Shown: positions 5,399-43,009 of the stretch, piece by piece
How the letters are laid out: each line of letters begins with the position of its first letter
Numbering within the stretch: the stretch's first letter is position 1
NCBI GenBank assembly: GCA_002269645.1
Contig: NIVC01000528.1
Span: forward strand, 62,001-126,000
Length of the DNA stretch: 64,000 nt
Direction of reading: 5' to 3'
Origin: Macrostomum lignano
Taxonomy: Eukaryota
Notes under the pieces: model-generated
Told to the model about the DNA's origin: nothing
The model's input: the letters and a program-made list of their open reading frames with translations, nothing else
Databases searched by the model: none
Translations under genes and position numbers: made by a program

Positions 5399-8134
5399 AT
5401 GAAAACTTTTTACCATTTTTGCTATTTTTCTGTCTGGATCATGCCACTTTCTGGCACTGCTGTTGCTGGTGATTCAAGTAAAGATTGGGAGAAGCTTAAA
5501 GCTGAAGGAAATGAACATTACAAAAACATGAAGTGGTCAGAGGCAGCTGACTGCTACTCCCAAGCAATTGGCATCAACTCAAAAGTCGCCGCCTTGTACT
5601 CAAATCGTGCCCTCTGTCAGATACAATTGGCCAAGTTCGATCTTGCACGTCAAGACGCTGAGGACGCCATTGCAATCGATCCGAATCAGGTGAAGTTCTA
5701 CCGAACTCTGTCTGAAGCTTTATTCAACCTTAAGTTGTTCAAAGAGGCTGTCGATGCGTGTAGAAATGGACTGAAGATCGATTCAAGAGATGAAACTCTA
5801 AATGTTAGAGCGCGAGATTGCATGGCCCTTATCATAGACCGCGAAATTAAAGAGCACCCTTTTGCTGGGGGCTTTGATCAATTGAAAACCAAAGATGCTT
5901 CAAAAAATCTTGCCGATCACGTGATGAAACAAGGGCCCGTTTCACCGGACGACGTAGGAACGATGGACAGTACCAATTGGCAGACTGCTTCAGAAATCAA
6001 GAAAGCTCACCGTATTTTACTGGCAGGCAGAGGTACCGTGCGCGGCGAGCAGAAAGCTCTTAAAATCTTTGAATCCGCTGCCAAGCGTGGAAGTGCGGAG
6101 GGTCTGTACAATATGGCTTTAATGTACAAAGACGGAATGGCTGGACTGGCCGTCAACCCGAAGAAGTATCTCGATTTGTGCCGCAAAGCTGCAGAACAGA
6201 AGCCCTACTTGAAAGTGAAAACAATCGGTACCGTTTTACGCAACATTGGCGTTGCAGAAGCAGAGAATGCTGTAGCAATGGCCTATAGAGATGGTCTAGC
6301 CGTTGACCAGGACGACAAGCTTGCTTTCAATTGGTTTCTGAAAGCTGCAGAGCATGGCTGTCCATCAGGAATGAACAATCTAGGTCTGGCACTTTACAAT
6401 GGCATGGGCTGCGAAATGAACCTAAAATCTGCCCGCTCATGGTACCAGAAGTCTGCAGATCTCGGTCAGTCGGAAGCTCTTTTTAATTTGGCGGGAATGC
6501 TCGTGAAGGGAGAGGGAGGACCACAAGACGCATTCAAGGCGGCACAGCTGCTTAAAACTGCTGCTGATCAGGGCCTTCCAGGCGCTCTCCTGGCATTGCA
6601 GCACCTGCAGCGTTCTGGGGCTTTTGGTGCCGCATCAATGAATGCTTCAACCAAGGTCGTTCGGCAAATGGCTGACTCAAACGAAAAGCAAGCTCTGTTT
6701 GTAATCGGAATGAACTACCTTATGGGAGAAGGCGGCTTCACTAAAGACCTGATAGAGGCGGAGAAGCACCTAAGGAAGGCTTCTGCTTTAAATCACAAGG
6801 AAGCAACATTTCAGTTTGGAAGGCTTCTTCTGCAGCAGCGACGTAATGAAGACGCCGCAATTTATATTCGAAAAGCCGCAGACAGTGAAAACGAAGATGC
6901 TCAGCGGACTTATGGTCACATTTTGGCTTTTGGTCACGGTTGCGAACGCAATGTGTCGCAAGCTCGTCGATGGCTGCTTCGTTCAAAGCAGCCTCAGTCC
7001 GATGTTGACGAACTTATCAAATATTCCACTGCAGTTATCGAGTTCGAAGCTGCCGAGAAGCTCTCCAAAACTGGGCTAACATACTTTGAGCGAATCGAAC
7101 GATATGCCGAATCTCTGGTGTCAAGCGAGGAAAAACAGGGTGTTAAAGACTTGCTCAGGATTTTCAAGAATAGTCATGAGAACCCGCCTCATCCCACGCG
7201 TCTTTACTCGGATTTTAACCTGTCCGCTGTAATGCCAATGATGGCAAAGCGAGTTGCTCAAGGATCTAAAACGGCGCAGAAATTTTTCGTTTGTTTGAAT
7301 CTACTCGACCAGGCAGATTTGGCGCTAGAGATTAATCGCATATCAGACGCGTTTCGTCTGTATCGGCAGGCTGATAGAGTCTGGCACCCGCTTCCAGTCG
7401 ACTTGGAGAAATTAAGGCGTCTATTTTCTGCCGCAACGCAAGCCTTCGAGCGAAACCCGAGAGACGCAGATGCGCTGTACGTTATAGTACATTACAACAT
7501 GGCTTTGAAACTTTGCAGCCTTGCAGAGCTGCTTCGCATGGCATCGATGTGCACTCATCTGAATCCTGATGTCGCCGATTACCACAACCTAGTTGGCCAT
7601 TTGCATGCATTTAATGGCGATTATATTGCATCTCATCGATCGATTGAACGAGCTCTCGAGCTTGAATGGGAGCCGGACTGGCTGTACAGTAAAGCGTCCT
7701 CTCTGCGCTTACAAGATGGAGTTGATCGCGAAGCTGTGATCAAGGCTTACGAGGAGTACATTTCGTCCAGTGAGCCAGACAATCACAATGTCCCAAAGGC
7801 TTTTTACAGCCTAGCCGAGAGCTATTCCATCACGGACATTGAAAAAGCCCGAGAGTATTTCGAAAAGGGTCTCCGTGCCGAGAGTCCTGAAATAAGACTG
7901 CCGGTTTTCGAGTCACTCGACGACTTTCCTCCAAAGAAGCTGATGAAAATCATTTTGCAAGATCCGCTGCTCTCGAGTTCGGCTTCTTCGGCCAAGTCGA
8001 GCAACTGCCGATGCGCGAACTGCGGAAAACTTGATGCCCTGCAGCGCTGCAGCAAGTGCAAAATCTCTTACTATTGTGGTCGCGACTGCCAAGTAAACCA
8101 CTGGAAAAAGCACAAGAAGAATTGTCACGCCTAA
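5399..8134 (+). CDS. TPR / Sel1-like repeat / TPR / MYND zinc-finger protein, paralogue 1 (no N-terminal HEPN-like domain); likely start at ATG 5441 (897 aa)
   Basis: TPRs (LKAEGNEHYK..A..CYSQAI..LYSNRA), Sel1 repeats (AFNWFLKAAEHGCPSGMNNLG; WYQKSADLGQSEALFNLA), C-terminal CANCGK..RCSKCK..YCGRDCQVNHWKKHKKNC. Single long ORF that aligns with three downstream paralogues. Confidence 0.9.
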   Translation: MKTFYHFCYFSVWIMPLSGTAVAGDSSKDWEKLKAEGNEHYKNMKWSEAADCYSQAIGINSKVAALYSNRALCQIQLAKFDLARQDAEDAIAIDPNQVKFYRTLSEALFNLKLFKEAVDACRNGLKIDSRDETLNVRARDCMALIIDREIKEHPFAGGFDQLKTKDASKNLADHVMKQGPVSPDDVGTMDSTNWQTASEIKKAHRILLAGRGTVRGEQKALKIFESAAKRGSAEGLYNMALMYKDGMAGLAVNPKKYLDLCRKAAEQKPYLKVKTIGTVLRNIGVAEAENAVAMAYRDGLAVDQDDKLAFNWFLKAAEHGCPSGMNNLGLALYNGMGCEMNLKSARSWYQKSADLGQSEALFNLAGMLVKGEGGPQDAFKAAQLLKTAADQGLPGALLALQHLQRSGAFGAASMNASTKVVRQMADSNEKQALFVIGMNYLMGEGGFTKDLIEAEKHLRKASALNHKEATFQFGRLLLQQRRNEDAAIYIRKAADSENEDAQRTYGHILAFGHGCERNVSQARRWLLRSKQPQSDVDELIKYSTAVIEFEAAEKLSKTGLTYFERIERYAESLVSSEEKQGVKDLLRIFKNSHENPPHPTRLYSDFNLSAVMPMMAKRVAQGSKTAQKFFVCLNLLDQADLALEINRISDAFRLYRQADRVWHPLPVDLEKLRRLFSAATQAFERNPRDADALYVIVHYNMALKLCSLAELLRMASMCTHLNPDVADYHNLVGHLHAFNGDYIASHRSIERALELEWEPDWLYSKASSLRLQDGVDREAVIKAYEEYISSSEPDNHNVPKAFYSLAESYSITDIEKAREYFEKGLRAESPEIRLPVFESLDDFPPKKLMKIILQDPLLSSSASSAKSSNCRCANCGKLDALQRCSKCKISYYCGRDCQVNHWKKHKKNCHA

Positions 8135-10005: not shown

Positions 10006-10248
10006 TAAGGTTGCGATTTCAGGGGCCGGTTTTAACCGGCTCTGTAATCGTGTTTAGCCGACGGGGCCGCCCCTCCGCCCGTCTGTGCGTGCGGCCCGCG
10101 CGTGTGCATCCCTGCCGCAAGGTGGGGTGCTGGGTGCCGGCCGGCAGGCGGGGGTGTTGGGTTGGGGGTGGGCGGCGTCGGCCCCCTTTTATTTGTGCGC
10201 TCACGCTCTCTCGTGCGCGCTGCGAGAGCGCTTTGGCTCGTAAAATTT
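10006..10248 (+). repeat. Split direct repeat A1 (243 bp) of the Ngaro element
   Basis: Matches 17658..17900; one mismatch seen. Confidence 0.93.
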
Positions 10249-11181: not shown

Positions 11182-11204
11182 GCAAGCGCGCCGACACGGC
11201 GCGC
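11172..11204 (+). promoter_or_regulatory. Candidate -1 programmed ribosomal frameshift signal between ORF1 and RT
   Basis: A_AAA_AAC at 11172..11178 in the ORF1 phase just before its TGA, a 7-nt spacer, then an 8-bp GC stem gcgcgccg-aca-cggcgcgc at 11186..11204. The -1 frame is open into the RT ORF. Confidence 0.7.
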
Positions 11205-11255
11205 GAAACCGATTTTACCCCTCCTGCTTTTAACTGCCTCGCTCAGCCCGCTCCC

Positions 11256-13017: not shown

Positions 13018-13311
13018 TGTTGGGGTTGTACTTTGGTTTTTCATGTTGTTTCACTTCTCTCTCTCTCTCTCTCTCTCTCTCCCGTGACTGATCATTCTTG
13101 CGCGCTATCGTTTTACCCCTACCTGTGTACATTTGTGCTTGCCAGTGTGCATGGTTTTAACCCCCAGCCAATCGGATGGCGTTTGTCTACCAATGTACGT
13201 GGTTTCGTGTTATGTAGTCAAATAAATACTTTCGTCACTTCGGTAGAGATCTTTCTATGGTTTACTCCTTCGCTTGCAAACATGACTTGACTCAGTTTTC
13301 CTAGACTAACA
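13018..13311 (+). repeat. 5' LTR of the young Gypsy (contains a (CT)12 run)
   Basis: Appears identical to 16392..16685 by eye. Confidence 0.95.
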
Positions 13312-13333
13312 TTTTGGCGTCGCAAGCAGGATC

Positions 13334-14011
13334 ATGAGCATCAAATTGAGAGAGACGCTGCCGTTGAGCAACATAGATGAGCTTCGCGCCTGGGTTGAAG
13401 TATTTGACGCCCAGGCCAGATCCAAAGGAGTCGAAGATACCGACGAGAGACGAGCGCTGACCGACGCTTTCATGGGCTGCCTCGGGGTCGCTGAGCTCAT
13501 AAAAGTCAAGCAGCTGGTTGCTCCAAAAACCCCGTCTGAGATGAAATGGTCTGAAATCAAGCAATGCCTACTGGCGTTTGTGGAGCCCAAGAAGAAACTG
13601 CAGATCGCTGAGAGGACAGCCTTCATGTCTATGCGCCAGGCCGAAGGCGAAACCGTCACCAGCTATGCCGCTCGTCTCAGGGAGCAAGCCGTCGTATGCG
13701 AGTTCGAGAGCCTGAAAAAGGAAGGAGCGGACCCCGCCGAAGCGCTCATCAAGATGCGGCTCATTGCCGGTCTGGCCAACTCGAACATCAGGAACAAGGT
13801 GCTCGAGCGTGAAGTTACTCAAGAACTGACGGTCGATCAGGTCACAGAATATGTTCAGCAGCTGCTGATGGTCAGCAACTTTTCAGCTGGGTCCCTGGCT
13901 GCTGCTCACTCGACTCTCGTGGATTCGGTGGTGCACCAGGCTAGGTCGCTGTCGACCGCGGGTCTGACTACGGCTGATGAAGCTCACTGCCCGCAGGCCT
14001 GGTCCAGCTGA
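13334..14011 (+). CDS. gag: Gypsy gag (no recognisable zinc knuckle)
   Basis: Starts just after the PBS; ERTAF..RQAEGETVTSYAARLRE..CEF and IKMRLIAGL motifs. Confidence 0.85.
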   Translation: MSIKLRETLPLSNIDELRAWVEVFDAQARSKGVEDTDERRALTDAFMGCLGVAELIKVKQLVAPKTPSEMKWSEIKQCLLAFVEPKKKLQIAERTAFMSMRQAEGETVTSYAARLREQAVVCEFESLKKEGADPAEALIKMRLIAGLANSNIRNKVLEREVTQELTVDQVTEYVQQLLMVSNFSAGSLAAAHSTLVDSVVHQARSLSTAGLTTADEAHCPQAWSS

Positions 14012-14082
14012 GTCCAGAAGACTCCTATCGTGATGAGCCCGTATTCTACTGTGGAGAAGGAAAGCCTGCCGAGTTCTGCACT

Positions 14083-16338: not shown

Positions 16339-16391
16339 GGACAGGTCTTGGTTTCTTTTGTTTTTTGTTTTGCTGCTTTTGGGGGGAGCAG

Positions 16392-16685
16392 TGTTGGGGT
16401 TGTACTTTGGTTTTTCATGTTGTTTCACTTCTCTCTCTCTCTCTCTCTCTCTCTCCCGTGACTGATCATTCTTGCGCGCTATCGTTTTACCCCTACCTGT
16501 GTACATTTGTGCTTGCCAGTGTGCATGGTTTTAACCCCCAGCCAATCGGATGGCGTTTGTCTACCAATGTACGTGGTTTCGTGTTATGTAGTCAAATAAA
16601 TACTTTCGTCACTTCGGTAGAGATCTTTCTATGGTTTACTCCTTCGCTTGCAAACATGACTTGACTCAGTTTTCCTAGACTAACA
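16392..16685 (+). repeat. 3' LTR of the young Gypsy
   Basis: Same length and sequence as the 5' LTR; followed by the TSD ATGCG. Confidence 0.95.
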
Positions 16686-17586
16686 ATGCGATTCTGCGCC
16701 GCCCACAGACTTCAACCGCTGTCAGCGCAGCCCGCCGACGTGTGCAACTACCTGGCGGAGCTGGCGAACAACCGGCTGTTCTCAGTCAGCAGCCTATCCT
16801 GCCACCTCGCCGCCGTGTCCTGGCTCTACAAATTAAACAGCGTGGCTGACCCGACGAGGCAGCCACTGGTTCAGCTGGGCCCTGCGCGGCGCCCGCCGGC
16901 TCCTCGGCGCCGCCCCAAGGAGCAAACGAGCGTTGTGGCCGGCCGACCTGCAGCGGCTGCACGGCGTGCTGCGACCTGAAGAGCCCAGGGACTGCGCATT
17001 CTGGTGCGCCTGCATTGTGGGCTTGTGGGCCATGCTGCGGCGAGCCAACCTGTGCGTATACGGCCGGTTCGATCCGCAGCGAGACCTCAGCGCGAGCTGC
17101 ATCCGGCCGTCAAGGGCGGGCGTCATCCTCGTCATTCCGAGGTCGAAGACCAACCAGTTCGGGGCGCGCCAGCACCGAGTTTTCTTGCCGCAGCTCCCAG
17201 ACGGACATCCACTCTGCCCGGTCACCGCGCTCCAGAAGCAGCTGCGCATTAACCGACCGCAGGACACCCAGCATCACTTGTTCAGTACCCGAACCAGACG
17301 GTCCACAGCGCCGCTCACCGCGCGCACCTTCGCGAGGCGCCTGTCCACAGCACTTCGACAGGCCGGGTTCGCCGAGCCAGCCAGGTTCTCTGGGCACTCG
17401 TTGCGTCGAGGTGGCGCTACATCCGCGGCGGAGGCCGGCATCCCCATCGATTCAATCATGCGAGTCGGTGACTGGGCAAGCAGCGCTGTAGAGCGGTACC
17501 TACCGCCTTCGGTTGAGCGCAGTGCGCCGCTGCGCCTGGCTTCACTCCTCCCCTCAACGTGACCTCCTCCCTGGTTTGGGATTTTT

Positions 17587-29067: not shown

Positions 29068-32000
29068 TGTTGTGGCTTATGCCATGCAAAAGATAATGGG
29101 TTTTGCCCCCATAGGCTCAAGGTTTAATGTCTATCATATATATTTGACCCATAGAGGCAATAGTTATTACAATGGATTGCCTTATCTATGAGTACAAGGC
29201 TTATATACAACATCTCCCCTTTTAATTCAGTCAATCCTGTATTTCATAAAATAAAATAAACGTTCAGTTGTATGTCTTCTTTCGTGGGTCAACTTGCATT
29301 CTAATGGGGGTACTCTTCTCCGCTGTGGTCTGCCTTGTGCAGTTGCATGAGCACCAGGATGTACTGTGTCCGGATGCGCTTCTGACTTCTTCGCTGTCTG
29401 GCATGTCTCTACTATCACTGGGGCTCATCGTCTCAAAAACTTCTGATTCCTTCGCAGGACTCGTCCACTTGTTAGCTTTACCAAGAATCGTTGTTTTTAT
29501 CACTTCGACGACGACTCCATATCTATCCCACTTCCTTTTTTGCATGTCTTGGAATGCCACTCTGTCACAAGTTCTTAACTTGGGAAGCAAGTGGGCTGTG
29601 CTATTGTAGTGTTGTTCGACCTTTTTTTGTCTCTCTACCGCTTTTCTGTCAATCTCGTCAGCTGCTACTCGCCATTCTTCTGCAAAGGCCCTTGCATGGG
29701 TTGGAAGAGTATCGCGAACAGGATGACCAAAAACCACTTGAGCTGGTGACCTGCCATCGTAACGTAGGGTGTTGCAATAGATTAGTACACCCTGCGCCAA
29801 GTTGTCCCAGTTTGGTTCTCTCTCGCATTCTGATTCCAATTTCCACACACTAGCTTTTTCATCGTCTTCACAGCTGCTTCAGTGCGTCCATTACTTTGAG
29901 CAAACGTTGAGATGATCGTCTGCTCTCCACGTTCCAGAGTTGCAGAAATCCAAGAAACGGCTTCGTGGTGAATTATGGCCCGTTATCTGACCATAAGATT
30001 TCTGGAGCACCCTTCTCGCAAAATCTTCTTCTCCAATGCGTTCATACATGTGCAACCTTGGGAATCACTTGGCCGTTTTTATTGGCAACACACACATGTA
30101 AGTCGCTATTGGCTGTTAGCAGTCACGTGACTACTCTTCCGTCCAATAGCGACTTACATGTGTGTTGCCAATAGAAACGGCCGGGTGAATCCCTAGGTTG
30201 CGCCCAAGCATGATGCGTTTATAACTTTGCTTGTTGGAGCTTCTGCGCCAAAATAGTCAAGTGTCGGCCAGCCGGACTTTCCATCTGCGGTCACTAAGAA
30301 TACTTTTCCTGCGTATTGGAACAGGTAGGTCAACGTGCAGTTCCTGGAAAACTCTTTCTGTTAGTTTACGCACGACGAGAGGCTCCTTTGGCTGGCTGGA
30401 AAAATTCTCTTGACACAGAGTGCACTTTCTAGATGCCATTTCAATGTCGTTTTGGTCCCGGGCCAATAAAATGACATCCGTGCTCGCGCTTTCTTTCTTT
30501 CTTTAACAAAATCCAATCTGGTTCACCAAGCCAAAGAACGCTCTGAGGTCAGTCAAATTTTCCGGTTTTGGAAACTCCTGAATGGCTTTGACGATTGCTG
30601 AATCAATCAAATATCCATTAGAGTCCAGTTGAAATCCCGCGAATTTGACGGTGGGTTGAGCAAACACAAACTTGTCTGGGTTTAGACTGACTTTTTGTTC
30701 TCTGCACCTCTCGAGGAACTCACGCACTGCCTTAAACATGCTTTTCATATTCTGTGTGAGCTAGTAGTATGTCGTGCACATTGTGATAAGTATTCTTCAG
30801 GTTTTCCAGAACTTCGTCTACTCGTCTGTTGTAGTGTTCAGCTATAGATGACAGTCCGAACGGTGCCCGCAGGTGTTTATACCGACCAAATGGCGTAATC
30901 AAGGTGGTAAGTGCCTGTGACTCCTTGTCCATCGGTATCTGGTGGTATCCTTTCGTGGCGTCGACCGTCGTGAAGAACTTTACACATTTTGGCATAGTGG
31001 ACATGGACACTACCTCGAATGGCGTCTGACTAACATATTTTTCTCGGACGACGTACTTGTTTAAGTTGCGCAGATCTGCACACAGTCTTATCTTGTTTTG
31101 ATGCTTCTTGGGCTGCACTGTTAGAGGGGCTCACCATTCTGTAGGCTCTGTGACCCTGGCTACGATTATAATACCATCGCGCTCCAGCTCCTCGAGCTCT
31201 TGCTTCAGCAGTGGCTTGAGTGGTTCAGCTATTCTCCTTGGTGCTGAGATCGCAAAAGGCTTTGCGTCTGCTGATACCTTGATCTGGAATGTCTCGCCTG
31301 TCATCTCGCTGATTCTTGTCGTAAACACAGAATATTCTCTTATTAACTAATCAATTGGTCTTGAGTTGGTAGATTTTGCTATGCTGCATAAAATTTGATT
31401 TGGGAAGTCCTTTGGAATTATCCGAAGCTTTCGACACATCTCACGCGATAGAATGGTCGTTGAGATCCCACTGAGGACGTGAAATTGTTGCTTTGTCTGG
31501 GCATCATCCATAGAAATCTGCATTTGAACCGATCCCATGGACTTTAGTAGTCGACCATAAACTGCCATTGGGTGCACGTCTGAGTAGTCTAGATTGTTCG
31601 CATCTATTCCAATTATCGACAGAACACTTTTGGGGATAGCGCCTTTGAAAGCTCCTTTGTCTGGCAACGCCCGGATGACTTTCATTTCGTTGGACGTTGC
31701 GACACTTAAGTTCAGGCAGCTTGATGTGATTTCGTCTGTCTCAGCACTTGTGGCAGATAGGATTGAGTTGAATTTCTCACCCTTTAGTTTTTGTCCGCTT
31801 TTTGGTTTGACATTGCTTTGAAAAATCTTGCCACATAACTTGCAGCTCTTTCTCCAAGCTGGACATTTCTCCTTTCCAAACTCGTGATCGCTTTTAAACC
31901 GATCCCTCAGGTTTTTGAGGCTCGTTCCCTGGGGAGTTCTTTGCTTTCCTATAGTTCGAGTTTCTTCGGATGGCAGATATGTTTGGCGTCTCGCCCTTCA

Positions 32001-33609: not shown

Positions 33610-36600
33610 TTGAAATTATATTTCCTGCAACTTTTTTCATTCATGTCTTGTCTCCGCATGGATTCTCAATCCATAAAAAATGCTAGAGCAGCTGCAAATA
33701 TTCATTTTGCTGTTAGTTTGCTACAAGAAGGAATTGATGCATTACTAAAGAGACACTGCGGACTTCAACAGCAACCAGATTTCAACACCTGCTTGCAGAT
33801 GTTAGAGACACAAATAGCCAAGCTTTTACCAGATGCGAGTTCCCAGGATCAGCTCCTTAAAACAATGCAGTTAGCCAGGGCGACAAGAAACCGCTACTCC
33901 CATCAGGAATTCGACGTCAACCGTTTCGAGCACGATGTCGAGTGCCTGCTCAAGCTGGCATCCTTGCTGGGACTGACTGAGTGCAGAGAGCAAATCATGA
34001 GCTTCACTGGCAGTGTGGGAACTTCTGGCGAAGACTGGGAGAAGCTGAAGATCGAAGGAAATGAGCACTACAAAAACTCAAGGTGGACAGAAGCGATGAA
34101 CTGCTACACCGGAGCAATCTGCATCAACTCAACACAGGCAATTCTGTACTCAAATCGCGCTCTGTGTGAAATCCAACTGCGCAAGTTCGATTTGGCTCGT
34201 GAGGACGCCGAGGAGGCCATCGTACTGAACCCAAAGCAGGTCAAGTTTTACCGAACATTATCTGAAGCACTGTGCAACCTTGAGCTGTATGAGGAGGCTG
34301 TGGCTGCGTGCGAGGATGGTCTGAAGATCGATCCTAGAGATGAGACTCTGCTTGTAAGATCGAGGGACTGCCAAGCTTTGGTAGCCGATGCCAAAATTAA
34401 AGAGCATCCTGTGGGCGGAGGTTTTAATCACATTAAAACGCCGGAGGTTTCGAGAAATTTTTTAGCTCATTTTTGGAAGCAGGCATCCGATGTCTCAGAT
34501 GAGGACGCCTGCCAAATGCACATGGTCCATCTACAGACCGCCTACGAAATCAGCAAAGCTCATCGTATTTTGCATTCAGGAAGAGGTAAAGTCGAGGAGG
34601 AGAATAAGGCGCTGGAAATCTACAAGTCTGCTGCCGAACGAGGTAGTGCAGAAGGCTTGTACAACATGGCAATCATGCTCAAAGAAGGATTGGCCGGAAT
34701 TTCTAAAAACCCGAAAAAGTATCTCGAACTTTGTCATGAAGCTGCTGAGCAAAAGCCCTATCTAAAAATCGCTAAAACTGATATTGTTTTCCCCAATATT
34801 GGCGTCGCGCAAACAGAAAACGCCATAGCAATGGCCTATAGAGATGGTTTTACAGTTGACCAGGATGACGAGCGCGCGTTCCAGTGGTTTCGGAAATCTG
34901 CAGAGCATGGCTGTCCATCCGGAATGAACAACCTGGGCTTGGCGCTGTACAGAGGCTCTGGCTGCAAGAAGAACCTTAACTCCGCTCGCTGGTGGTACCA
35001 GAAATCTGCGGACCTTGGACTCGCGGAGGCTCAATCGAATCTGGCTGGGATGCTCATAAATGGAGAAGGAGGACCACAGGACGCATCGAAAGCGGCTGAG
35101 TTATTAAAAGCTGCTGCAAAGCAGGGTCTTCCGGGTGCTGTCAAGGCACTGCAGCAGCTGCATGTGTCAGGGCCTCTCGGTGCTGAATCAATGCATGCTT
35201 CGAGAAAGGTTGTTCAGGAATTGGCTGACTCGAATGACAAGCAAGCCTTGTTTCTTATCGGAATAAACTACATGACCGGAGGAGGTGGTTTTGCTAAAGA
35301 CTTCGCGGAGGCCGAAAAATACTTAAGGAAGGCATCGGCCTTAAATCAGAAGGAAGCCATTTTTGAACTTGGAAGACTTTTACTACAGCAAAGAAAAAAC
35401 AAAGATGCTATACCTTTTTTGAAGAAAGCCTCTGAGAGTGGAAATACAGATGCTCAACGTATTCTGGGCGTTCAACTAGCTCTTAAGCACGGTTGCGAAC
35501 AAGATACAACAAAAGCTCGCCAGTGGCTGCTTCGTTCGAAGCTGAGCCCACGTGAAGTTGAAGAAATAATTCATTTTTGCAGTGACATTGTTCAGTTTGA
35601 AGCTTCTAAGAAACTTTCACCGGACGGCCTTTCTTGCTGTGAACGAGTCGAGAGACTTGCTGAATCTTTTGTGCAAAATGAGTCGAAAAAGCAAAGCCTA
35701 AAGAATTTGAGTGAAATTTTTAGACGACAAGAAGAGAACCCACCTCATCCAGCATCTTTTTGCTACAATCCAGACTCTCCTGGAATGATGCAGTCAATGG
35801 TTCTAAGTGTAGAAAAAGGTTCTAAAACAGCTATGAAGTTTTTTGTTGCTTTGAATCTTTTGCAACAGGCGAGTTTAGCATTGGATGATTGCAATTCATC
35901 AGCAGAAGCATTTCGCCTGTACAGACAAGCTCTTCGAGCCTGGGACCTTCTTCCAGTTGACGTTGACATTTGGGAGAGGCTCTTTGCCGCCGCATCAAAA
36001 GCGCTTGATAGAAATCCGAATGATGCCGATGCACTGTACATCATTATGGACTACAAAAGTATGAACAAACTTTGCAACGATGCTGAGTTGCTTCAAATGG
36101 CATACCGCTGTGCCTCGTGTAATCCTGATATAGCTGATTACCATTACAGATTAGGCTGCATGTACGCATTTACAGGCGATTACGTTGCCTCAGTTCGAAG
36201 TTTTGAACATGCTCTTGAGCTTGAATGGGAGCCTGAGTGGCTTTATTCTAAAGCGACGTCGCTACGACTCCAACGTGATACAGACCGAGCAGCTGTTATC
36301 AAAGCGTATGAAGACTACATTTCTTCTAATGAACCAGACGGCCAGAAAATTCCCGAGGCATGCTATTGTATTGCCATTGAATACTTCACTATGAGCGACC
36401 TTAAGAATTCACGAATTTATTTTGAGAAGGGTCTCCGAGCCGAGAGTCCTGATGTAAGGCTGCCTTGCTTCGGACCAATCAAGAATTTTGATTCTAAAAA
36501 CATACTGAAAGAGGCTTTTAAGTTTAACTTGCCCAATGCCCCCAATCAGCCAATCGCTTGCACTAATAAATGCGCGAACTGTGAACGGCCTGGAGCAACC

Positions 36601-36696
36601 AGGTGTTGTAGAAAATGCAAGAAAATTTACTACTGTGATCGAGATTGTCAGCAAAAGCACCGGAAGAAACACACCAAAGTTTGCGCTGCTAAGTAA
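33610..36696 (+). CDS. HEPN-like / TPR / Sel1 / TPR / MYND protein, paralogue 2; likely start at ATG 33658 (1012 aa)
   Basis: Intronless ORF. RNRYSH at 33886..33903, TPRs, Sel1 repeats, and MYND CANC..CRKC..YCDRDCQ..H..C. Confidence 0.9.
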   Translation: MKLYFLQLFSFMSCLRMDSQSIKNARAAANIHFAVSLLQEGIDALLKRHCGLQQQPDFNTCLQMLETQIAKLLPDASSQDQLLKTMQLARATRNRYSHQEFDVNRFEHDVECLLKLASLLGLTECREQIMSFTGSVGTSGEDWEKLKIEGNEHYKNSRWTEAMNCYTGAICINSTQAILYSNRALCEIQLRKFDLAREDAEEAIVLNPKQVKFYRTLSEALCNLELYEEAVAACEDGLKIDPRDETLLVRSRDCQALVADAKIKEHPVGGGFNHIKTPEVSRNFLAHFWKQASDVSDEDACQMHMVHLQTAYEISKAHRILHSGRGKVEEENKALEIYKSAAERGSAEGLYNMAIMLKEGLAGISKNPKKYLELCHEAAEQKPYLKIAKTDIVFPNIGVAQTENAIAMAYRDGFTVDQDDERAFQWFRKSAEHGCPSGMNNLGLALYRGSGCKKNLNSARWWYQKSADLGLAEAQSNLAGMLINGEGGPQDASKAAELLKAAAKQGLPGAVKALQQLHVSGPLGAESMHASRKVVQELADSNDKQALFLIGINYMTGGGGFAKDFAEAEKYLRKASALNQKEAIFELGRLLLQQRKNKDAIPFLKKASESGNTDAQRILGVQLALKHGCEQDTTKARQWLLRSKLSPREVEEIIHFCSDIVQFEASKKLSPDGLSCCERVERLAESFVQNESKKQSLKNLSEIFRRQEENPPHPASFCYNPDSPGMMQSMVLSVEKGSKTAMKFFVALNLLQQASLALDDCNSSAEAFRLYRQALRAWDLLPVDVDIWERLFAAASKALDRNPNDADALYIIMDYKSMNKLCNDAELLQMAYRCASCNPDIADYHYRLGCMYAFTGDYVASVRSFEHALELEWEPEWLYSKATSLRLQRDTDRAAVIKAYEDYISSNEPDGQKIPEACYCIAIEYFTMSDLKNSRIYFEKGLRAESPDVRLPCFGPIKNFDSKNILKEAFKFNLPNAPNQPIACTNKCANCERPGATRCCRKCKKIYYCDRDCQQKHRKKHTKVCAAK

Positions 36697-38234
36697 AGTT
36701 CGAAAGCCACCGTCTGCATGCCAAATTTTTTTCTTCGAGCTCTTTTTTGCCAAATTAACGCAACGTAATTCTTTTGCTTCTTTTGCCTTAGCATCTATTT
36801 ATCCTCTTATATTCCTTTTGTTTGTTTATCTGTTTTAACACTATTCTGCTGTCTCTACACGTTTTTCATGCATGCATTCATACATGTTTTTATAAGTATC
36901 TTTTCGGCCGCTAACTAAGAACTAATAATTTCTAACCCTCTAAGCCTTCGCTGATCATCATCCCCCACTAGAATAAACTGCTGAGAATTGCTGAGATGTC
37001 AAGGCTTGAGGTCAGAAGCTACATGTAGTTTATTCAAAATTTAGTATTCCATTCTTTGTTGGCTCGCCAACGGGGGCGCTGATTGGTAGCTTATGCTTAT
37101 GCTACTATTGGTTTATTTTGTCCTAAATTATACATAATTAGTGTTCAGTCACAGACTTAATTCACTCGAGTCAGCTGACGCGATTAAGCACGCGAATATC
37201 AGTAGCAAGTTTAAAATAAAAAAATAAACGTGAGAAAATAGATGTTTAGATAACGCGCCGTTCCCAGACTCCCGATTCTGGCCGACTCCCACGGACCCTT
37301 TCGCTCGTGCGTCATCTGAAATAACTCAGTATTGAGTGTAGTTGTTGAATTCCCGCCGCACGTAAAGACATGAAGACCCTTTAAATCAGACTTTTAGGGC
37401 GGCCTGTACTTGTCCTTTACAATCAAGCACTTGTGGGTTTTGTAAGAGTGCAGCTGTCCACCACTGCTACACTCCACCACGCTCTGATAAAATTTCAATT
37501 TTCCTAATTCCCTAAACTAAATTATATTCTTAATACGAGCTAGTCCCTAAGGTTAGTTCTAAATTACGGAAAGTATATAAAACCTAACCCTAACCCTAAC
37601 TTTAGGCTCGTTTAGTTTTGTGATGATATTTCCTGTTACAGTTGTTCTATAGTTTGTCAATTTTTTTAACTTTCAGCTACTAGCGTACTTTGTTAGATAG
37701 AATATCTGACTTTCGAACATTTTTGGCATGTTTTAACCTTTTAACCGTAAAATTTTAAATATATAAGCATAGATTTTTACTTCCGTAACCTTGCGTCTCT
37801 ATCTGATGTTTTTTTCTTTCAAGATCAAATGTTATTTAGGGCTAGGTAATTCTTCACACGTATTTCGGATGCACTCTGTCGCCCCTAGGTAAGTTTAAGC
37901 TTTGAAATTAACGGTAGGCTTCATAATAGACTAATACGAGAGTAATGCGTTTTCGTAGCCATCAAATGAAGCCCTTTTTGTATAATCACTTTGTACATGA
38001 GTTTTATGAATCGATGACTCATTTGATGCTGGTGTGAACGAACGTAGCCGACCTACTGGTACGAGTACATCATACTCGTCGGCTCTAGGAGCTAAGCTAT
38101 GGGGTTTGTCACCAATCAAATTTTATTCCCTATCAGTTCTATTAAGTCTATGTGTTCAAGTTAGCATTAGCATCTCTGGAAAATGTGTTCAACGTTTGTC
38201 TTCAAATTGCATTTCAGCGCCATTCCCATTGAAC

Positions 38235-41200
38235 ATGATGGATTTTCAAACAATAGATCAAGCTAAGGCAACTGCAAGCATTTATTTTGCTGTAAATCTG
38301 GTACAGGACTCGATTTACGCAATGCTAAAGAAAAAGTTTGGACTAAAAAAGAAGCTGGATTTTAAAGGTTGTCTAGAGATGGTGAAGAAACACGTAGCCA
38401 AATTCTTGCCTGACGCAAATTCCCATGCTCAGCTTCGTAACGCAATGAATTCAGCCAGAGAAACTCGAAACCGATATTCCCATCAAGATTTCGACGTAAA
38501 CCGTTTTGAGCACGATGTCGAGTCTCTGCTCAGTCTGGCCTCATTGTTGGGACTTACCGAGTGCAGAGAGCAAATCATGAAGCACATTGGCAGTTTTGTA
38601 CCTTCAGGTAAAAATTTGGAGAAACTCAAGGCTGAGGCAAGCGAGCACTACAAAAATTCCAGGTGGACAGAAGCGATGAACTGCTACAGCGGAGCAATCC
38701 GCATCAGCTCAGCAGAAGCTGCTCTGTACTCGAATCGCGCTCTGTGTGAAATCCAACTGCGCAAGTTCGAGTTGGCTCGTGAGGACGCCCAGAGCGCCAT
38801 TGGTATTGACCGGAATCAGGTGAAGTTTTACTGCATTTTGTCCGAAGCACTTTACAACCTTCAGCTCTACAAGGAGGCTGCAGATGCGTGTAAACAAGGC
38901 CTGAGGATAGATTCGAAAAATGAGACTCTGATTGGGAGAGAAAAAGATTGTCAAGCTTTCATTGTGGATGAAGACGCCAAACTACAACCAGTCCATGACG
39001 GCAGTGAGAAATTACAAGAAGCAGGCGTTTCTGAAACAATGTTAAATCGAATTTCCACTGAAGACGTTTGTTTCATGGACAGCGTCATGTGCGAAACATC
39101 ACTCGAGCTCCGTAAAGCGCATCGCATTTTGCAGTCGGACAGAACTGATCTTCGCGAAATGCAAAAAGCACTGAATATATTTGAGTCAGCCGCCAAGCGT
39201 GGAAGTGCGGAGGGGCTGTACAATACCGCATTGATGTACAAGAATGGATCGGCCGGGCTGGTAAAGAACCCAAAGAAATATCTCAGTTTGTGCCGTGAAG
39301 CGGCCCAGCAAAAGCCTTATATAAAAGTAGTGGCCAATAATACAATTTTACCAAATGTTGGAGTTGCAGAAGCAGAAAATGCCATTGCGATGGCCTATAG
39401 AGATGGCTTAACTGTTGAAAAGGATGACAAGCTCGCCTTCCAGTGGTTTCTGAAGTCTGCACAGCATGGCTGCGCGTTAGCAATGAACAGCCTAGGCATG
39501 GCCTTCTACAATGGAACTGGCTGCGAAAAGCACCTTGCCTTCGCTCGGTCGTGGTACCAAAAGTCTGCGGACCTCGGACAAGCTGAGGCTCAGTTTAGTT
39601 TAGCCGAAATGCTTGTCAACGAAGAGGGAGGGCCAAAGGACTTGTCAAAGGCAGGTGAGCTTTTTAAAGCTGCTGCAGACCAGGGCTTTCCAGGCGCTAA
39701 AACTGCACTCAATCGGCTGCAGCGACTTGGACATGTTGGTGCTAAATCGGTTAATGCGGAAGTCTCTCAGGAAACAACTGATTCGTATGAAAATAAAGTT
39801 TTTTTTCTTGTTGGAATGAACTACATGATCGGAGGACAAGGCTTGACGGAGGCAGACTTGACGGAGGCAGAAAAATACTTGAGAAAGGCTTCTAATTTGA
39901 ATCATAAGGAAGCAACTTTTGAGCTTGGAAAATTTCTTTTACAGCAAAGAAAAAGTGCTGAGGCAATTTCTTTCCTTCGAAAAGCTGCAGAATTACATAG
40001 CCAGGGTGCTCAACGGACTTTTGGCTTTTTATTGGCTTTCGGTCATGGTTGCGAGCGAGATGAGGCGCAAGCTCGTCGATGGCTGCTACGTTCAGAGACT
40101 AGCAAATGTGTCATCGATGACAGCATAAAATATTACGGTGCTGTTGTCGAGTTTGAAGCTGCTCAAAATCTCTCAACACGTGAATTAACTGTCTTTGAGC
40201 GAATCGAAAGGTACACGAATTCACTTTGTTCATCTGCACCGGACAAGCAGAGGCTGAAAGATTTGCTTGGTATTCTAGCACAAAGCCTCTGCACACGTCA
40301 CCCTGCTGCGGAATTGGATTCGCTCCCTTGGCTGATGGCCGTGCCAACAATGGCGGAGAGGGCCATGCAAGGATCAAGAACTGCCAATAAGTTTTTTCAT
40401 AGTTTAGATCTTCTAAACAAAACACGTTCGGCATTGGAAAGTAAGAACTCTTCAGAGGCCTTTCGCCTCTATAGGCAAGCAAATAGAGTCTTTCCGACTG
40501 TTCCTGTGGATTCTCTGACCATGGGTATGCTGGTTTCTGAAGCTAAAGAAGCCTTGGAGACTAACCCTAACAACACTGACGCTATATATCTACTTATTTT
40601 ATACAATGCCAGCAAGAGTCTCTGCAGTGTTTCAGAGCTACTTCAAATGGCGTTGCAATGTACTAACTTGAGTCCAGATGTAGCAGATTACCAGAACATG
40701 CTTGGCAACATGTACATATTCAATCGGGAGTTCGTTTCGGCCTGTCAATCAATTGAGCTAGCTCTTGAGCTCGAACAGGAACCGGACTGGCTCTACGGTA
40801 AAGCATCGGCCCTGAGAAGTCAAGATGATATTGATCTCAAATCTGTGATCGATGCGTACGAAGAATACATTGCCTCCAGCGAGCCCGACAGCCTGAATGT
40901 ACCGAACGCTTTTTACTGCATAGCTGAGGCGTATCTGGGCCTGAATGATGAAGACAAGGCTAAAGAGTTTTACGAGAAAGGTCTCCATGCCGAGAGTCCT
41001 GAAATAAGACTTCCATATTTCAAACGGTGTTATGATTATTTTGTAAAGAAGATGCTGGAGGCATATTTTGATGCAGTCGCAACTATTCGAGACTTCGTAC
41101 TGACGAGCTGCATGGCCGTCGCGAGCAGCGAGTCAAGCGGGAGCCGATGCGCCAACTGCGGGAAGCTCGAAGATCTGCTTCGCTGCAGCAGATGCCATAA

Positions 41201-41270
41201 AACTTTCTATTGCGGTCGGGATTGCCAACGGAAGCACTGGAAGCAACACAAACTACATTGCAGTCCCTAG
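38235..41270 (+). CDS. HEPN-like / TPR / Sel1 / TPR / MYND protein, paralogue 3 (about 1011 aa; frame open from 38034)
   Basis: MMDFQTI.. aligns with the paralogue 2 start. RNRYSH at 38466..38483, same repeat order, MYND CANCGK..RCSRC..YCGRDCQRKHWKQHKLHC. Confidence 0.9.
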   Translation: MMDFQTIDQAKATASIYFAVNLVQDSIYAMLKKKFGLKKKLDFKGCLEMVKKHVAKFLPDANSHAQLRNAMNSARETRNRYSHQDFDVNRFEHDVESLLSLASLLGLTECREQIMKHIGSFVPSGKNLEKLKAEASEHYKNSRWTEAMNCYSGAIRISSAEAALYSNRALCEIQLRKFELAREDAQSAIGIDRNQVKFYCILSEALYNLQLYKEAADACKQGLRIDSKNETLIGREKDCQAFIVDEDAKLQPVHDGSEKLQEAGVSETMLNRISTEDVCFMDSVMCETSLELRKAHRILQSDRTDLREMQKALNIFESAAKRGSAEGLYNTALMYKNGSAGLVKNPKKYLSLCREAAQQKPYIKVVANNTILPNVGVAEAENAIAMAYRDGLTVEKDDKLAFQWFLKSAQHGCALAMNSLGMAFYNGTGCEKHLAFARSWYQKSADLGQAEAQFSLAEMLVNEEGGPKDLSKAGELFKAAADQGFPGAKTALNRLQRLGHVGAKSVNAEVSQETTDSYENKVFFLVGMNYMIGGQGLTEADLTEAEKYLRKASNLNHKEATFELGKFLLQQRKSAEAISFLRKAAELHSQGAQRTFGFLLAFGHGCERDEAQARRWLLRSETSKCVIDDSIKYYGAVVEFEAAQNLSTRELTVFERIERYTNSLCSSAPDKQRLKDLLGILAQSLCTRHPAAELDSLPWLMAVPTMAERAMQGSRTANKFFHSLDLLNKTRSALESKNSSEAFRLYRQANRVFPTVPVDSLTMGMLVSEAKEALETNPNNTDAIYLLILYNASKSLCSVSELLQMALQCTNLSPDVADYQNMLGNMYIFNREFVSACQSIELALELEQEPDWLYGKASALRSQDDIDLKSVIDAYEEYIASSEPDSLNVPNAFYCIAEAYLGLNDEDKAKEFYEKGLHAESPEIRLPYFKRCYDYFVKKMLEAYFDAVATIRDFVLTSCMAVASSESSGSRCANCGKLEDLLRCSRCHKTFYCGRDCQRKHWKQHKLHCSP

Positions 41271-41749
41271 TTTTTCCTACACAAGTATTTAGAACTAACG
41301 CGGAATGGAAAATCTTTTTTGTGAGTTAGTGTGACATTTGGCATTTGTAATGTGCTTAATCCGTATTAATGTATAAAAAAGTATGTCACGATTGACTGCG
41401 ATTTTCTTTACTGCTTAAATTTTACTATTCGTTTTAGATAATTTACATCAGAAACGACAGGCATCAATTATCCCTGAATTTTGTTACATTTGCGTCTAAT
41501 TTTGATTTCATTAATTTCTGCTTTGCCAACACAATTTGTTTTATCAGTTTTATAAAGCCCCAATGGCACACCTCCCAAAGACGCGAGCGCTGTTTCCGAT
41601 TACTTTAATGCGAGTTGAACTCTTCCAAATTGTGCAACGCATGCACAGCCTGAAAGGTAATAAATGTTTTTGGGCGAGTAAATGCATGTATCTAGAACGC
41701 TAGGACGCTAGAATTTGCGCGACTGGATTTCGCGCTACTTGTTTTCTGC

Positions 41750-41885
41750 GCGACTGGATTTTGGGCGACCTGGAATTGAAGCGACTGTATTTCACGCGAC
41801 TGAATTTCACGCGACTGAATTTCACGCGACTGAATTTCACGCGACTGTATTTCACGCGACTGTATTTCACGCGACTGTATTTCGA
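41750..41885. repeat. 15-bp minisatellite (gcgactgaatttcac)
   Basis: About 7 near-perfect units plus degenerate flanking units. Confidence 0.85.
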
Positions 41886-43009
41886 ACGATTGGATTTGAG
41901 TTAGAGGGTTTAGATAGGAGTAAAATTTGCTGGTGTAAATGTACTTAAATCCAGTTCTATGCACATCTACGTTGGTGTAACTTTCATATACCAAATTAAT
42001 GGTTTGTCGGTAGGTATCTATGTGATCGATTCGAGAAAAAACGGCTCAACCAATCTTCATCAAACTTAATTGTTCTAAATTTGTACACTCCTCTGTTGCG
42101 CTTTGCCTGTTGATTTACTTTTCAATTAGCTGCTTTTAATATATTTATATGATGCACGAGTTTCCACTTCGAGATCATACACCTAACGTTCTGGATGTTC
42201 AGTCTTTTTACTTTCATTTAACTGATTTGTATAAACTCAGACTTTACTTTTAAATCTGAGCAGACTTTCATTCAGAGCTACAGGACTTGACCTAGCCACA
42301 TCTTTCCCTAGAATTTAAGGGTTTCAGTCAGTCAGCCAGATAACTGATTAGTTATTTATCGAAAAACTTCTTATCTCGATAAGAAGTGCAAAATGCAAAA
42401 GTGCGCAAATGCAAAAAGAGAGAATGCAAAAGTTCTAATCAGTAGCCGACCAAATAAATTGTTTTATGTGCTTGACCCTTGACTCCTGAGAATTTCTTCT
42501 TGAGCTTTGGGTCTTAGCAACCCTCTGAGACAGATAACTGATTAGTTATTTATGGAAAAACTTCTTATCTCGATAATGCAGCAGACTCCATTGAAATTTG
42601 CTCTTTTTGCGAGAGTAGTGAGTGCCCTTGCACTTTAGTTGTACCCTTTGCGACCTTCATACTGACAGTATTTAATGAATTCCCAGCCCTGTCCCGAAGC
42701 CTCGGAAAAGGCAACTGCGAAACAGTATCGGTATATCGTTTAGTTTAAGTCTTTTAGCTCTCTAATCATTCCGACCTATTACTGCCTGATTAGAAAATAA
42801 TTTAAAGAGGCTGTCAATTACGAGTGTTTGATGCAAATCGTCGATCATAAGTCGCAACATCAAAACTTGAGTAAAAGCCTTTTCTTTCTTTTTTCTCTGT
42901 TAAACCCATTCCCGTTATGTATAATCCGTTTATTACACTAATAGCATGTTTTCTACTGTTTTAGCGGTTAAGCAAGTCGCTAGTTTTAGCCACAGTTTAT
43001 ACACGAAAT

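What the first reader, a model, noticed from the sequence alone, without database searches (positions are those of the whole stretch)
33658..33990. N-terminal domain with an invariant R-x4-H motif resembles a Swt1-like HEPN RNase
Seen: LA/SA-R-[AE]-T-RNRYSHQ-[ED]-FDVNRFEHDVE..LL.LASLLG in paralogues 2, 3 and 4 (motif at 33886, 38466, 43310). It is preceded by DF..CL.M, while the first ~70 aa otherwise diverge. Paralogue 3 encodes the motif with different synonymous codons (cga aac cga tat versus aga aac cgc tac), which points to protein-level constraint. Knowledge: RN-x3-H followed by a helix ending in LL..hG is the pattern of Swt1-like and DZIP3-like HEPN domains. Inference: a catalytically competent RNase domain.
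Basis: partly seen in the sequence, partly recalled or inferred. Interest (0 to 1): 0.82.

Follow-up and report, generated by a model that had tools for sequence, protein, structure and literature searches.

The report
Flatworm HEPN RNase-like domain family
Three of four tandem genes in this flatworm (Macrostomum lignano) region start with a small helical domain of the known HEPN ribonuclease superfamily with its catalytic motif intact, so they probably encode RNA-cutting effectors on a large repeat scaffold, a new but unsurprising member of a known kind.

Summary
The window is Macrostomum lignano contig NIVC01000528.1.

The HEPN reading is supported.
- Pfam HEPN_Swt1 (PF18731) is the top hit for all three N-domains, but below threshold (13-21 bits; cut-off 27.5).
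- An exhaustive HMM search found a small eukaryotic family: flatworm, bdelloid rotifers, oomycetes and metagenomic eukaryotes.
- Four members pass the Pfam cut-off (29-40 bits).
- A profile-profile comparison links the window domain to a five-orthologue set (those four plus one at 25.8 bits) at 99.3% probability.
- Across about 46 non-redundant members, the Arg is kept in 45/46 and the His in 42/44.

Caveats.
- p2 and p4 share a gene-conversion tract, so their identity is not independent evidence.
- Foldseek found no HEPN structure.
- DZIP3-like HEPN is not supported.
- RNase activity is inferred, not shown.
- Other M. lignano paralogues have lost the motif or the whole domain.

This is a new member of a known kind, in an undescribed HEPN-TPR-Sel1-MYND architecture.

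The parts
33658..34008 (+). p2 N-terminal HEPN domain (aa 1-117): helices 3-34, 42-56, 60-81, 87-103, 107-117
   Evidence: AF2 models with pLDDT 87.3 and 93.4. PF18731 is the top hit. hhalign to the orthologue set A4 (four pass the Pfam cut-off, one is just below) gives 99.3%.
33886..33906 (+). [quoted passage not shown]
   Evidence: Sequence. Family conservation R 45/46, H 42/44, Q 42/44. Position in the model matches the canonical HEPN position described in PMC3710099.
33778..33783 (+). p2 D41-F42, a nearly invariant pair at the N-cap of helix 2 and a candidate for the second, acidic, HEPN active-site residue
   Evidence: D 42/43 and F 42/43 across the family. Helix 2 starts at residue 42. 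Its spatial proximity to the motif was not measured.
38238..38588 (+). p3 N-terminal HEPN domain; motif at 38466-38486, encoded with different synonymous codons
   Evidence: This is the best single-sequence Pfam hit: HEPN_Swt1 at E 3.1e-4, 21.4 bits.
43070..43432 (+). p4 N-terminal HEPN domain (aa 1-121); motif at 43310-43330
   Evidence: From about 43295 it is 98-99% identical to p2 because of gene conversion.
34030..34353 (+). p2 three-TPR module immediately after the HEPN domain, of the Hsp70/Hsp90 co-chaperone 'clamp' type
   Evidence: phmmer against PDB: STIP1/Hop 6.7e-24, then SPAG1, RPAP3, CNS1, SGTA, CHIP and PP5. Pfam TPR_1/TPR_2.
34588..35577 (+). p2 Sel1-repeat region (about 6 repeats; approximate limits)
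   Evidence: Pfam Sel1 at E 2.1e-31, 6 stretches.
36571..36684 (+). p2 C-terminal MYND zinc finger (aa 972-1009)
   Evidence: Pfam zf-MYND at 25.1 bits against a cut-off of 22.7.
33658..36696 (+). Paralogue 2, an intronless ORF of 1012 aa: HEPN-TPR-Sel1-TPR-MYND
   Evidence: It is 50% identical over its full length to M. lignano PAA88107.1.
38238..41270 (+). Paralogue 3, 1010 aa, same architecture
43070..46138 (+). Paralogue 4, same architecture but with an in-frame TGA at 45668-45670 (codon 867). The frame stays open downstream through the MYND finger.
5399..8134 (+). Paralogue 1: TPR-Sel1-MYND without the HEPN domain
   Evidence: Homology to p2 starts at p2 residue 113, with no HEPN remnant in the window. 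Pfam domains. It is identical to the database protein P0045.

Best explanation
The first roughly 117 residues of paralogues 2, 3 and 4 form a HEPN domain of the Swt1-like clade (Pfam PF18731). It has an intact R-N-x3-H active-site motif.

Proposed mechanism.
- The domain most likely acts as a metal-independent endoribonuclease.
- It would be the effector end of a large scaffold protein. That scaffold consists of a co-chaperone-type TPR clamp, Sel1 repeats, further TPR-like repeats and a C-terminal MYND finger.
- Each protein carries a single HEPN domain. By analogy with other HEPN RNases, activity should require two such domains to come together and pair their R-x4-H motifs. The repeat scaffold and its partners would control that pairing.
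- The target RNA is unknown.

Shown here:
- homology to HEPN;
- motif conservation in distant relatives;
- the canonical position of the motif in a confident model;
- purifying selection;
- the domain architecture.

Inferred, not shown:
- RNase activity;
- dimer-dependent activation;
- any role in defence or RNA quality control.
For: - PF18731 is the top Pfam hit for all three window domains. It is hit by 17/27 family members and passes the Pfam cut-off in four orthologues, three with the same HEPN-TPR-Sel1 architecture and one a short 154-aa record.
- hhalign of the window domains against a five-orthologue set (those four plus P0057, 25.8 bits) gives 99.3% probability, E 1.8e-20.
- The window profile finds those orthologues at E 1e-6 to 1e-31 in a library of 1.8 billion proteins.
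- R77 is kept in 45/46, H82 in 42/44, and position 78 is N or H in 41/46. This is the R-[N/D/H]-x3-H pattern described for active HEPN domains (PMC3710099).
- The AF2 model (pLDDT 93.4) has four core helices. R77 lies in the last turn of helix 3 and H82 is the first loop residue. PMC3710099 places the motif exactly there.
- dN/dS is 0.12 over residues 71-115 between p2 and p3.
- PADLOC and NCBIfam weak hits converge on HEPN families.
- The gene family is expanded: four tandem copies here and at least three further loci in the same genome.
Against: - The window domains themselves score below the Pfam cut-off (13-21 bits against 27.5).
- Foldseek of both models against PDB and BFVD returned only generic helical bundles (best E 0.59).
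- Profile searches against PDB sequences found no HEPN chain.
- Other M. lignano paralogues have lost the His (RDRHSRQ in the PAA88107.1 cluster), lost both Arg and His (TSRLSTQ in P0046), or lack the whole domain (p1). The scaffold can therefore persist without catalysis.
- No RNA cleavage, dimer or expression data were available.
- dN/dS shows no diversifying selection, which an arms-race effector might be expected to show.
Confidence: 0.6

Rival explanations
1. The domain is a true HEPN fold but is not an enzyme. It would serve as an RNA- or nucleotide-binding sensor, or as a dimerisation module, for the TPR-Sel1-MYND scaffold. This is the role proposed for the HEPN domains of Swt1 itself and of sacsin.
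For: - Swt1's own HEPN is inferred to be inactive and a sensor (PMC3710099).
- Within M. lignano, paralogues with a degenerate motif (P0001 cluster, P0046) or without the domain (p1) are retained as full-length ORFs.
Against: - In p2, p3, p4 and P0043 the R, N and H are all intact.
- These residues are the most conserved columns of the whole family.
- The motif segment has the lowest dN/dS of the protein.
- PMC3710099 argues that HEPN domains keeping this motif are RNases.
Confidence: 0.27
2. The domain is not HEPN at all. It would be a generic four-helix bundle adaptor (FAT-like or similar) whose R-x4-H is coincidental.
For: - Foldseek top hits are FAT domains, chemoreceptor ligand-binding bundles and designed bundles, none of them HEPN.
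- R-x4-H arises by chance in 22% of shuffles.
Against: - All those Foldseek hits are non-significant (E >= 0.59, TM 0.2-0.4).
- Profile evidence for HEPN is strong and comes from three independent libraries.
- The motif is nearly invariant at 21-65% overall identity.
Confidence: 0.05
3. The domain belongs to the DZIP3/hRUL138-like HEPN family, which is also fused to TPRs in animals, rather than to the Swt1-like clade.
For: DZIP3-family HEPN domains are reported fused to TPR and expanded in some invertebrates (PMC3710099).
Against: PF18738 HEPN_DZIP3 did not appear among the families listed for the 27 members (the 25 most-matched of 30 at E <= 1), nor among the listed hits of the full-length proteins. 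PF18731 hit 17 of the 27 members.
Confidence: 0.03

Closest known systems
Swt1-like HEPN clade (Pfam PF18731), in particular its catalytically active, lineage-expanded eukaryotic members (the Ava_2192-like versions in Daphnia, Naegleria and dictyostelids; PMC3710099)
   Same: - Profile-level homology.
- An R-N-x2-[SA]-H motif at the junction of helices 3 and 4.
- A small helical domain.
- Lineage-specific expansion in a eukaryote.
   Different: - Those eukaryotic versions are described as solo domains. Here the domain heads a roughly 1,000-aa TPR-Sel1-MYND protein.
- The window copies score below the Pfam cut-off.
Swt1 (yeast and human), the protein that gives the clade its name
   Same: Same Pfam family.
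   Different: - Swt1 has a dyad of HEPN domains that lack the motif and are inferred to be inactive.
- Its nuclease is a PIN domain (PMC3710099).
- The window proteins have one HEPN domain with an intact motif and no PIN domain.
RNase L and Ire1 (KEN-type HEPN)
   Same: The working model is the same: a repeat or sensor module controls dimerisation of a C- or N-terminal HEPN RNase. R, the following polar residue, and H are all catalytic (PMC3710099).
   Different: - A different HEPN family, circularly permuted and fused to a kinase or pseudokinase.
- No sequence-level relation was detected here.
Sacsin, DZIP3 and C6orf70/ERMARD (eukaryotic HEPN proteins fused to chaperone modules or TPRs)
   Same: - A HEPN domain is combined with TPR or chaperone-related modules.
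- The window's TPR module is most similar to Hsp70/Hsp90 co-chaperone clamps, which recalls sacsin's DnaJ and Hsp90-like context.
   Different: - They belong to different HEPN families, and none was hit by the profiles.
- Their architectures differ.
- No Sel1 or MYND combination is reported for them.

Membership tests
HEPN superfamily | R-x4-6-H motif with a polar residue (N, D or H) immediately after the Arg | tested here: met
   R77-N78-R-Y-S-H82 in p2, p3 and p4. Across the family: R 45/46, N/H/D at position 78 in 42/46, H 42/44.
HEPN superfamily | [quoted passage not shown] | tested here: met
   The AF2 model with pLDDT 93.4 has helices 3-34, 42-56, 60-81 and 87-103, plus 107-117. R77 is in helix 3 and H82 is the first loop residue. 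The definition is taken from PMC3710099. The bundle packing itself could not be inspected because coordinates are not returned.
HEPN superfamily | Three-dimensional similarity to solved HEPN structures | tested here: inconclusive
   Foldseek against PDB (two models) and BFVD gave no match with E < 0.5, only generic helical bundles. Short all-helical bundles carry little signal for this method.
HEPN superfamily | Second conserved acidic residue in helix 2, near the motif | tested here: inconclusive
   D41 is conserved in 42/43 members and caps helix 2. It is not in the usual E-x3-[KR] context, and its distance to the motif was not measurable.
HEPN superfamily | Metal-independent endoRNase activity dependent on the R and H, usually through a composite site formed by two HEPN domains | not testable with these tools
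   No biochemical data, and no multimer prediction was available.
Pfam PF18731 HEPN_Swt1 | Score at or above the curated gathering threshold (27.5 bits) | tested here: not met
   The window domains score 13.0-21.4 bits and 13.6 bits, although PF18731 is the top hit each time.
Pfam PF18731 HEPN_Swt1 | Significant homology to sequences that do pass the threshold (transitive membership) | tested here: met
   P0021 40.2, P0056 35.4, P0017 29.3 and P0060 29.0 bits. hhalign of the window set against a five-orthologue set (these four plus P0057, 25.8 bits) gives 99.3%, E 1.8e-20, over 115 columns. The full-length proteins are 27-34% identical with the same architecture.
Pfam PF18738 HEPN_DZIP3 | Profile match | tested here: not met
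   It is not among the families listed for the 27 members (25 of 30 shown at E <= 1), nor among the listed hits of the full-length proteins.
Hsp70/Hsp90-binding TPR clamp (adjacent module, not the finding itself) | Three-TPR domain with the carboxylate-clamp residues (K, N, N, K, R of Hop TPR1; residue list from memory) | tested here: inconclusive
   The best PDB relatives are all EEVD-binding co-chaperones. In the Hop TPR1 alignment, K131, N135, N166 and K196 match four clamp positions. The fifth position is T200, with R199 adjacent. Binding was not tested.

The most novel reading that the evidence does not exclude
The HEPN-TPR(clamp)-Sel1-MYND proteins could be a previously undescribed class of eukaryotic RNases that are tethered to chaperones and activated by oligomerisation.

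- The TPR clamp would dock on the C-terminal tails of Hsp70 or Hsp90.
- The Sel1 and MYND parts would sense a partner or a non-self ligand.
- The N-terminal HEPN domains would pair and cut RNA.
- This would couple proteostasis or infection sensing to RNA decay, as a flatworm, rotifer and oomycete analogue of RNase L or Ire1.

The patchy distribution (Macrostomum, bdelloid rotifers, saprolegnian oomycetes, unidentified protists) would then reflect horizontal spread or repeated loss of a conflict system. The motif-less paralogues would act as regulators or decoys.
Probability: 0.2. Interest if true: 0.7.

Novelty: new member of a known kind. Interest (0 to 1): 0.42.

Why it matters
HEPN RNases are central effectors of prokaryotic defence (Cas13, Csm6, abortive-infection and toxin systems) and of a few eukaryotic pathways (RNase L, Ire1, Las1).

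This family adds a compact, apparently active HEPN domain to a eukaryote-only scaffold that no paper in the searched library describes. It is expanded in a regenerating flatworm model in which RNAi and transgenesis are available (from general knowledge, not checked here).

If the domain is active, it offers a tractable system for asking how repeat scaffolds and chaperone-binding modules gate a HEPN nuclease in animals.

It also shows that the M. lignano proteins are under-annotated. Their precomputed Pfam domain lists in the protein collection searched here carry no HEPN domain.

Tried and rejected
- Word-index search. The search with the p2 N-domain alone found nothing. The exhaustive HMM search was needed.
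- PDB sequence searches. The window profile and the family profile gave only spurious coiled-coil or unrelated hits: laminin beta-1 at E 6e-4 and a sodium channel at 0.22. These were rejected as low-complexity helical matches.
- Foldseek. Both AF2 models against PDB, and the better one against BFVD, gave no significant match. I treat this as uninformative rather than as evidence against HEPN.
- Remnant in p1. A tblastn search for a remnant HEPN exon upstream of p1, or anywhere else in the window, found none.
- Assembly collapse. I first read the database protein P0044, a p2/p4 hybrid, as an assembly collapse or a recombinant haplotype. I rejected this once the public contig proved 100% identical to the window and the gene model was seen to span 12 kb with p3 nested inside it. 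It is an annotation artefact.
- DZIP3-like HEPN. Considered and rejected: no profile hit.
- Homodimer model. This could not be run. The structure tool takes single chains of window or database sequences only.
- Literature. Searches for HEPN with MYND, Swt1, Macrostomum, rotifer or oomycete found no description of this architecture.
Full report
**What the window is.**
A 32,025-bp stretch of Macrostomum lignano assembly GCA_002269645.1, contig NIVC01000528.1, fetched through a database protein, is 100% identical to window 23646-55670. The window is therefore flatworm nuclear DNA.

It carries four + strand, apparently intronless paralogues of about 1,000 aa:
- p1 at 5399-8134;
- p2 at 33658-36696;
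- p3 at 38238-41270;
- p4 at 43070-46138.

About 25 kb of transposon debris lies between p1 and p2, and satellite arrays lie downstream.

**Checking the observation.**
- p2, p3 and p4 start with a roughly 117-aa domain that p1 lacks. p1's homology begins at p2 residue 113, and tblastn finds no remnant elsewhere.
- The motif R-N-R-Y-S-H-Q begins at 33886, 38466 and 43310.
- The 'DF..CL.M' element is present.

Two qualifications apply.
1. p2 and p4 are 98-99% identical in DNA from about residue 72 to 262. There dS is about 0.11, against 1.5-2.1 elsewhere. This is a gene-conversion tract, so their identity in the motif is not independent evidence. The p2 versus p3 comparison is independent: for residues 71-115 it gives dN 0.10, dS 0.85 and dN/dS 0.12, the strongest constraint of any segment.
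2. An R-x4-H by itself is cheap. It occurs in 22% of shuffles of the domain, and R-[NDH]-x3-H in 3%.

**What it is.**
*Window domains against Pfam.* Pfam's HEPN_Swt1 model (PF18731) is the top hit for each of the three domains. All hits are below the 27.5-bit cut-off (E 3.1e-4, 0.083 and 0.13).

*Finding relatives.* A word-index search found no relatives. An exhaustive HMM search of 1.84 billion representative proteins with the three-sequence profile found 25 (E down to 8.5e-31). A full-length search then added more. The named sources are:
- M. lignano;
- the bdelloid rotifers Didymodactylos carnosus and Rotaria sp.;
- the oomycetes Aphanomyces stellatus and Saprolegnia parasitica.

The remaining hits are unnamed metagenomic or assembly contigs. 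One that was inspected looks eukaryotic.

*Architecture.* Most full-length members share HEPN, three TPRs, Sel1 repeats, further TPR-like repeats and a MYND finger.

*Link to PF18731.*
- 17 of 27 aligned domains hit PF18731, with a best E of 4.6e-11.
- Four members pass the curated cut-off: P0021 40.2 bits, P0056 35.4, P0017 29.3 and P0060 29.0. P0057 falls just below at 25.8.
- hhalign of the window's three domains against those five sequences gives 99.3% probability and E 1.8e-20 over 115 columns.
- Weak hits in two other libraries are mostly HEPN families: CARF_HEPN, Csx1/Csm6, Cas13a/b and Cas13-ApeA in PADLOC, and Csx1 and HepT in NCBIfam.
- HEPN_DZIP3 never appeared.

*Motif conservation.* In 46-47 non-redundant domains, with 21-65% identity to p2:

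| Position | Conservation |
|---|---|
| R77 | 45/46 |
| Position 78 | N in 34, H in 7 |
| H82 | 42/44 |
| Q83 | 42/44 |
| D41 | 42/43 |
| F42 | 42/43 |

This is the R-[N/D/H]-x3-H signature that Anantharaman et al. 2013 (PMC3710099) identify as the HEPN RNase active site.

*Structure.* AlphaFold2 with the 27-sequence alignment gives pLDDT 93.4 and pTM 0.85. The helices span residues 3-34, 42-56, 60-81, 87-103 and 107-117. R77 sits in the last turn of helix 3, and H82 is the first residue of the loop to helix 4. [quoted passage not shown]

Foldseek of both models against PDB and BFVD found only non-significant generic bundles. Profile searches of PDB sequences found nothing relevant. I treat the structural search as inconclusive, not as contrary evidence.

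**How it most likely works.**
*Shown here:*
- the domain is a HEPN homologue;
- its catalytic-type residues are intact and strongly constrained in p2, p3, p4 and in the homeologous gene P0043.

*Inferred:*
- it is a metal-independent endoRNase;
- with one HEPN domain per chain, it must pair with a second copy to build the composite site seen in other HEPN nucleases (established knowledge of RNase L, Ire1, Csm6 and HepT).

*The rest of the protein.* The adjacent TPR module is most similar to Hsp70/Hsp90 co-chaperone clamps: STIP1 at 6.7e-24, then SPAG1, RPAP3, CNS1, SGTA, CHIP and PP5. Four of the five clamp positions match. The clamp residue list is from memory. This suggests, but does not show, chaperone docking. 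The Sel1 repeats and the MYND finger are protein-interaction modules. My best model is therefore a scaffold-gated RNase whose targets are unknown.

*The main rival.* The alternative is a non-catalytic HEPN acting as a sensor or dimeriser. It draws support from three observations:
- the PAA88107.1 cluster has RDRHSRQ, with His replaced by Arg;
- P0046 has TSRLSTQ, with Arg and His both lost;
- p1 lacks the domain altogether.

The scaffold can thus persist without catalysis. That pattern of active and inactive paralogues is itself typical of expanded HEPN families (PMC3710099).

**Comparison with what is known.**
- Membership of the HEPN superfamily and of the Swt1-like clade is supported by transitive profile evidence. 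The window sequences alone fail the Pfam cut-off.
- The name-giving protein Swt1 has inactive HEPN domains and cuts RNA with a PIN domain. The resemblance is therefore to the active branch of the clade.
- PMC3710099 lists many fusions for this clade and for other HEPN families (TPR, Sel1, NACHT, DEATH and others), but not TPR-Sel1-MYND.
- No paper in the searched library combines HEPN with MYND in a relevant way.
- Precomputed Pfam annotation already marks PF18731 on some orthologues, for example the Rotaria protein P0060. The architecture is therefore implicit in databases even though it is undescribed.

**Verdict.**
Catalytic competence is plausible but untested. This is a new member of a known kind, of moderate interest.

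Noticed in passing
window 33646-45670 (p2 5' part joined to p4 3' part): The public gene model BOX15_Mlig016935g1 (P0044, 866 aa) is an exact hybrid. Its first 212 residues are p2 and its last 702 are p4, overlapping inside the 98-99% identical tract. The model spans 12 kb with p3 nested inside it as a separate gene. This is probably an annotation artefact caused by the gene-conversion tract, and it leaves about 800 codons of p2 unannotated.
   Followed up: yes
window 45668-45670: p4 has an in-frame TGA where the paralogues have a Lys codon (WLYN* against WLYSK). The frame stays open for 155 more codons through an intact MYND finger. This could be a very recent nonsense mutation, a truncated product, or read-through. 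The public gene model also ends there.
   Followed up: partly
window ~33870-34440 and ~43295-43865: A gene-conversion tract between p2 and p4: 98-99% nucleotide identity and dS about 0.11, against 1.5-2.1 in the rest of the genes. [quoted passage not shown]
   Followed up: yes
window 5399-8134 and 3311-4624: p1 lacks the HEPN domain. Homology to the other paralogues starts at 5438. A mariner/Tc1-type transposase ORF (HTH_48, DDE_3, Transposase_1) lies about 800 bp upstream. Whether its insertion removed the first part of the gene was not resolved.
   Followed up: partly
L003 (NIVC01000907.1:126232-149117): The homeologous locus has a p1-like gene (93.6% nucleotide identity to p1). It then has a single HEPN-bearing gene (P0043, 84% to p2, intact motif, no MYND) and the PH-domain gene. 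The p2-p3-p4 triplet is therefore not mirrored there.
   Followed up: partly
proteins P0001/P0030-P0033 and P0046 (other M. lignano loci, e.g. L001): Paralogues elsewhere in the genome keep the full architecture but have degenerate motifs: RDRHSRQ, with His replaced by Arg, and TSRLSTQ, with Arg and His both lost. They are likely catalytically dead copies.
   Followed up: partly
window 34030-34353 (and the equivalent in p1, p3, p4): The TPR module after the HEPN domain is closest to Hsp70/Hsp90 co-chaperone clamp domains (STIP1, SPAG1, RPAP3, CNS1, SGTA, CHIP, PP5). Four of five clamp positions are conserved.
   Followed up: partly
window 10102-17562 and 29264-31685 (- strand): Transposon debris between p1 and p2:
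- an RT/RNase H ORF (11256-13091) and a tyrosine-recombinase ORF (16933-17562), suggesting a DIRS-like element;
- a protease-RT-RNase H-integrase pol ORF (14083-16338);
- RT fragments on the minus strand (30732-31118).
   Followed up: partly
window 48313-49006, 51934-52454, 53606-55742, 56330-64000: Dense micro- and minisatellite arrays with periods of 13-31 bp and up to 126 copies fill most of the last 12 kb. They create the long repetitive ORFs listed there.
   Followed up: partly
window 51337-51840: An ORF with a PH domain (E 1.5e-9). It is part of a PH-domain gene that also flanks the family in the homeologous locus.
   Followed up: no
L002 (JGI metagenome 3300071516, contig Ga0620986_01126): The orthologue with the best Pfam HEPN score (P0021) lies on a 202-kb AT-rich eukaryotic contig. 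There the gene is called in three pieces: 530 aa, 312 aa, and a 126-aa piece with MYND. This suggests introns or a variant genetic code. The organism is unknown.
   Followed up: no
protein P0016 (JGI metagenome): One relative carries two copies of the domain. The second is degenerate (WNLVSRQ), a HEPN dyad like that described for Swt1.
   Followed up: no
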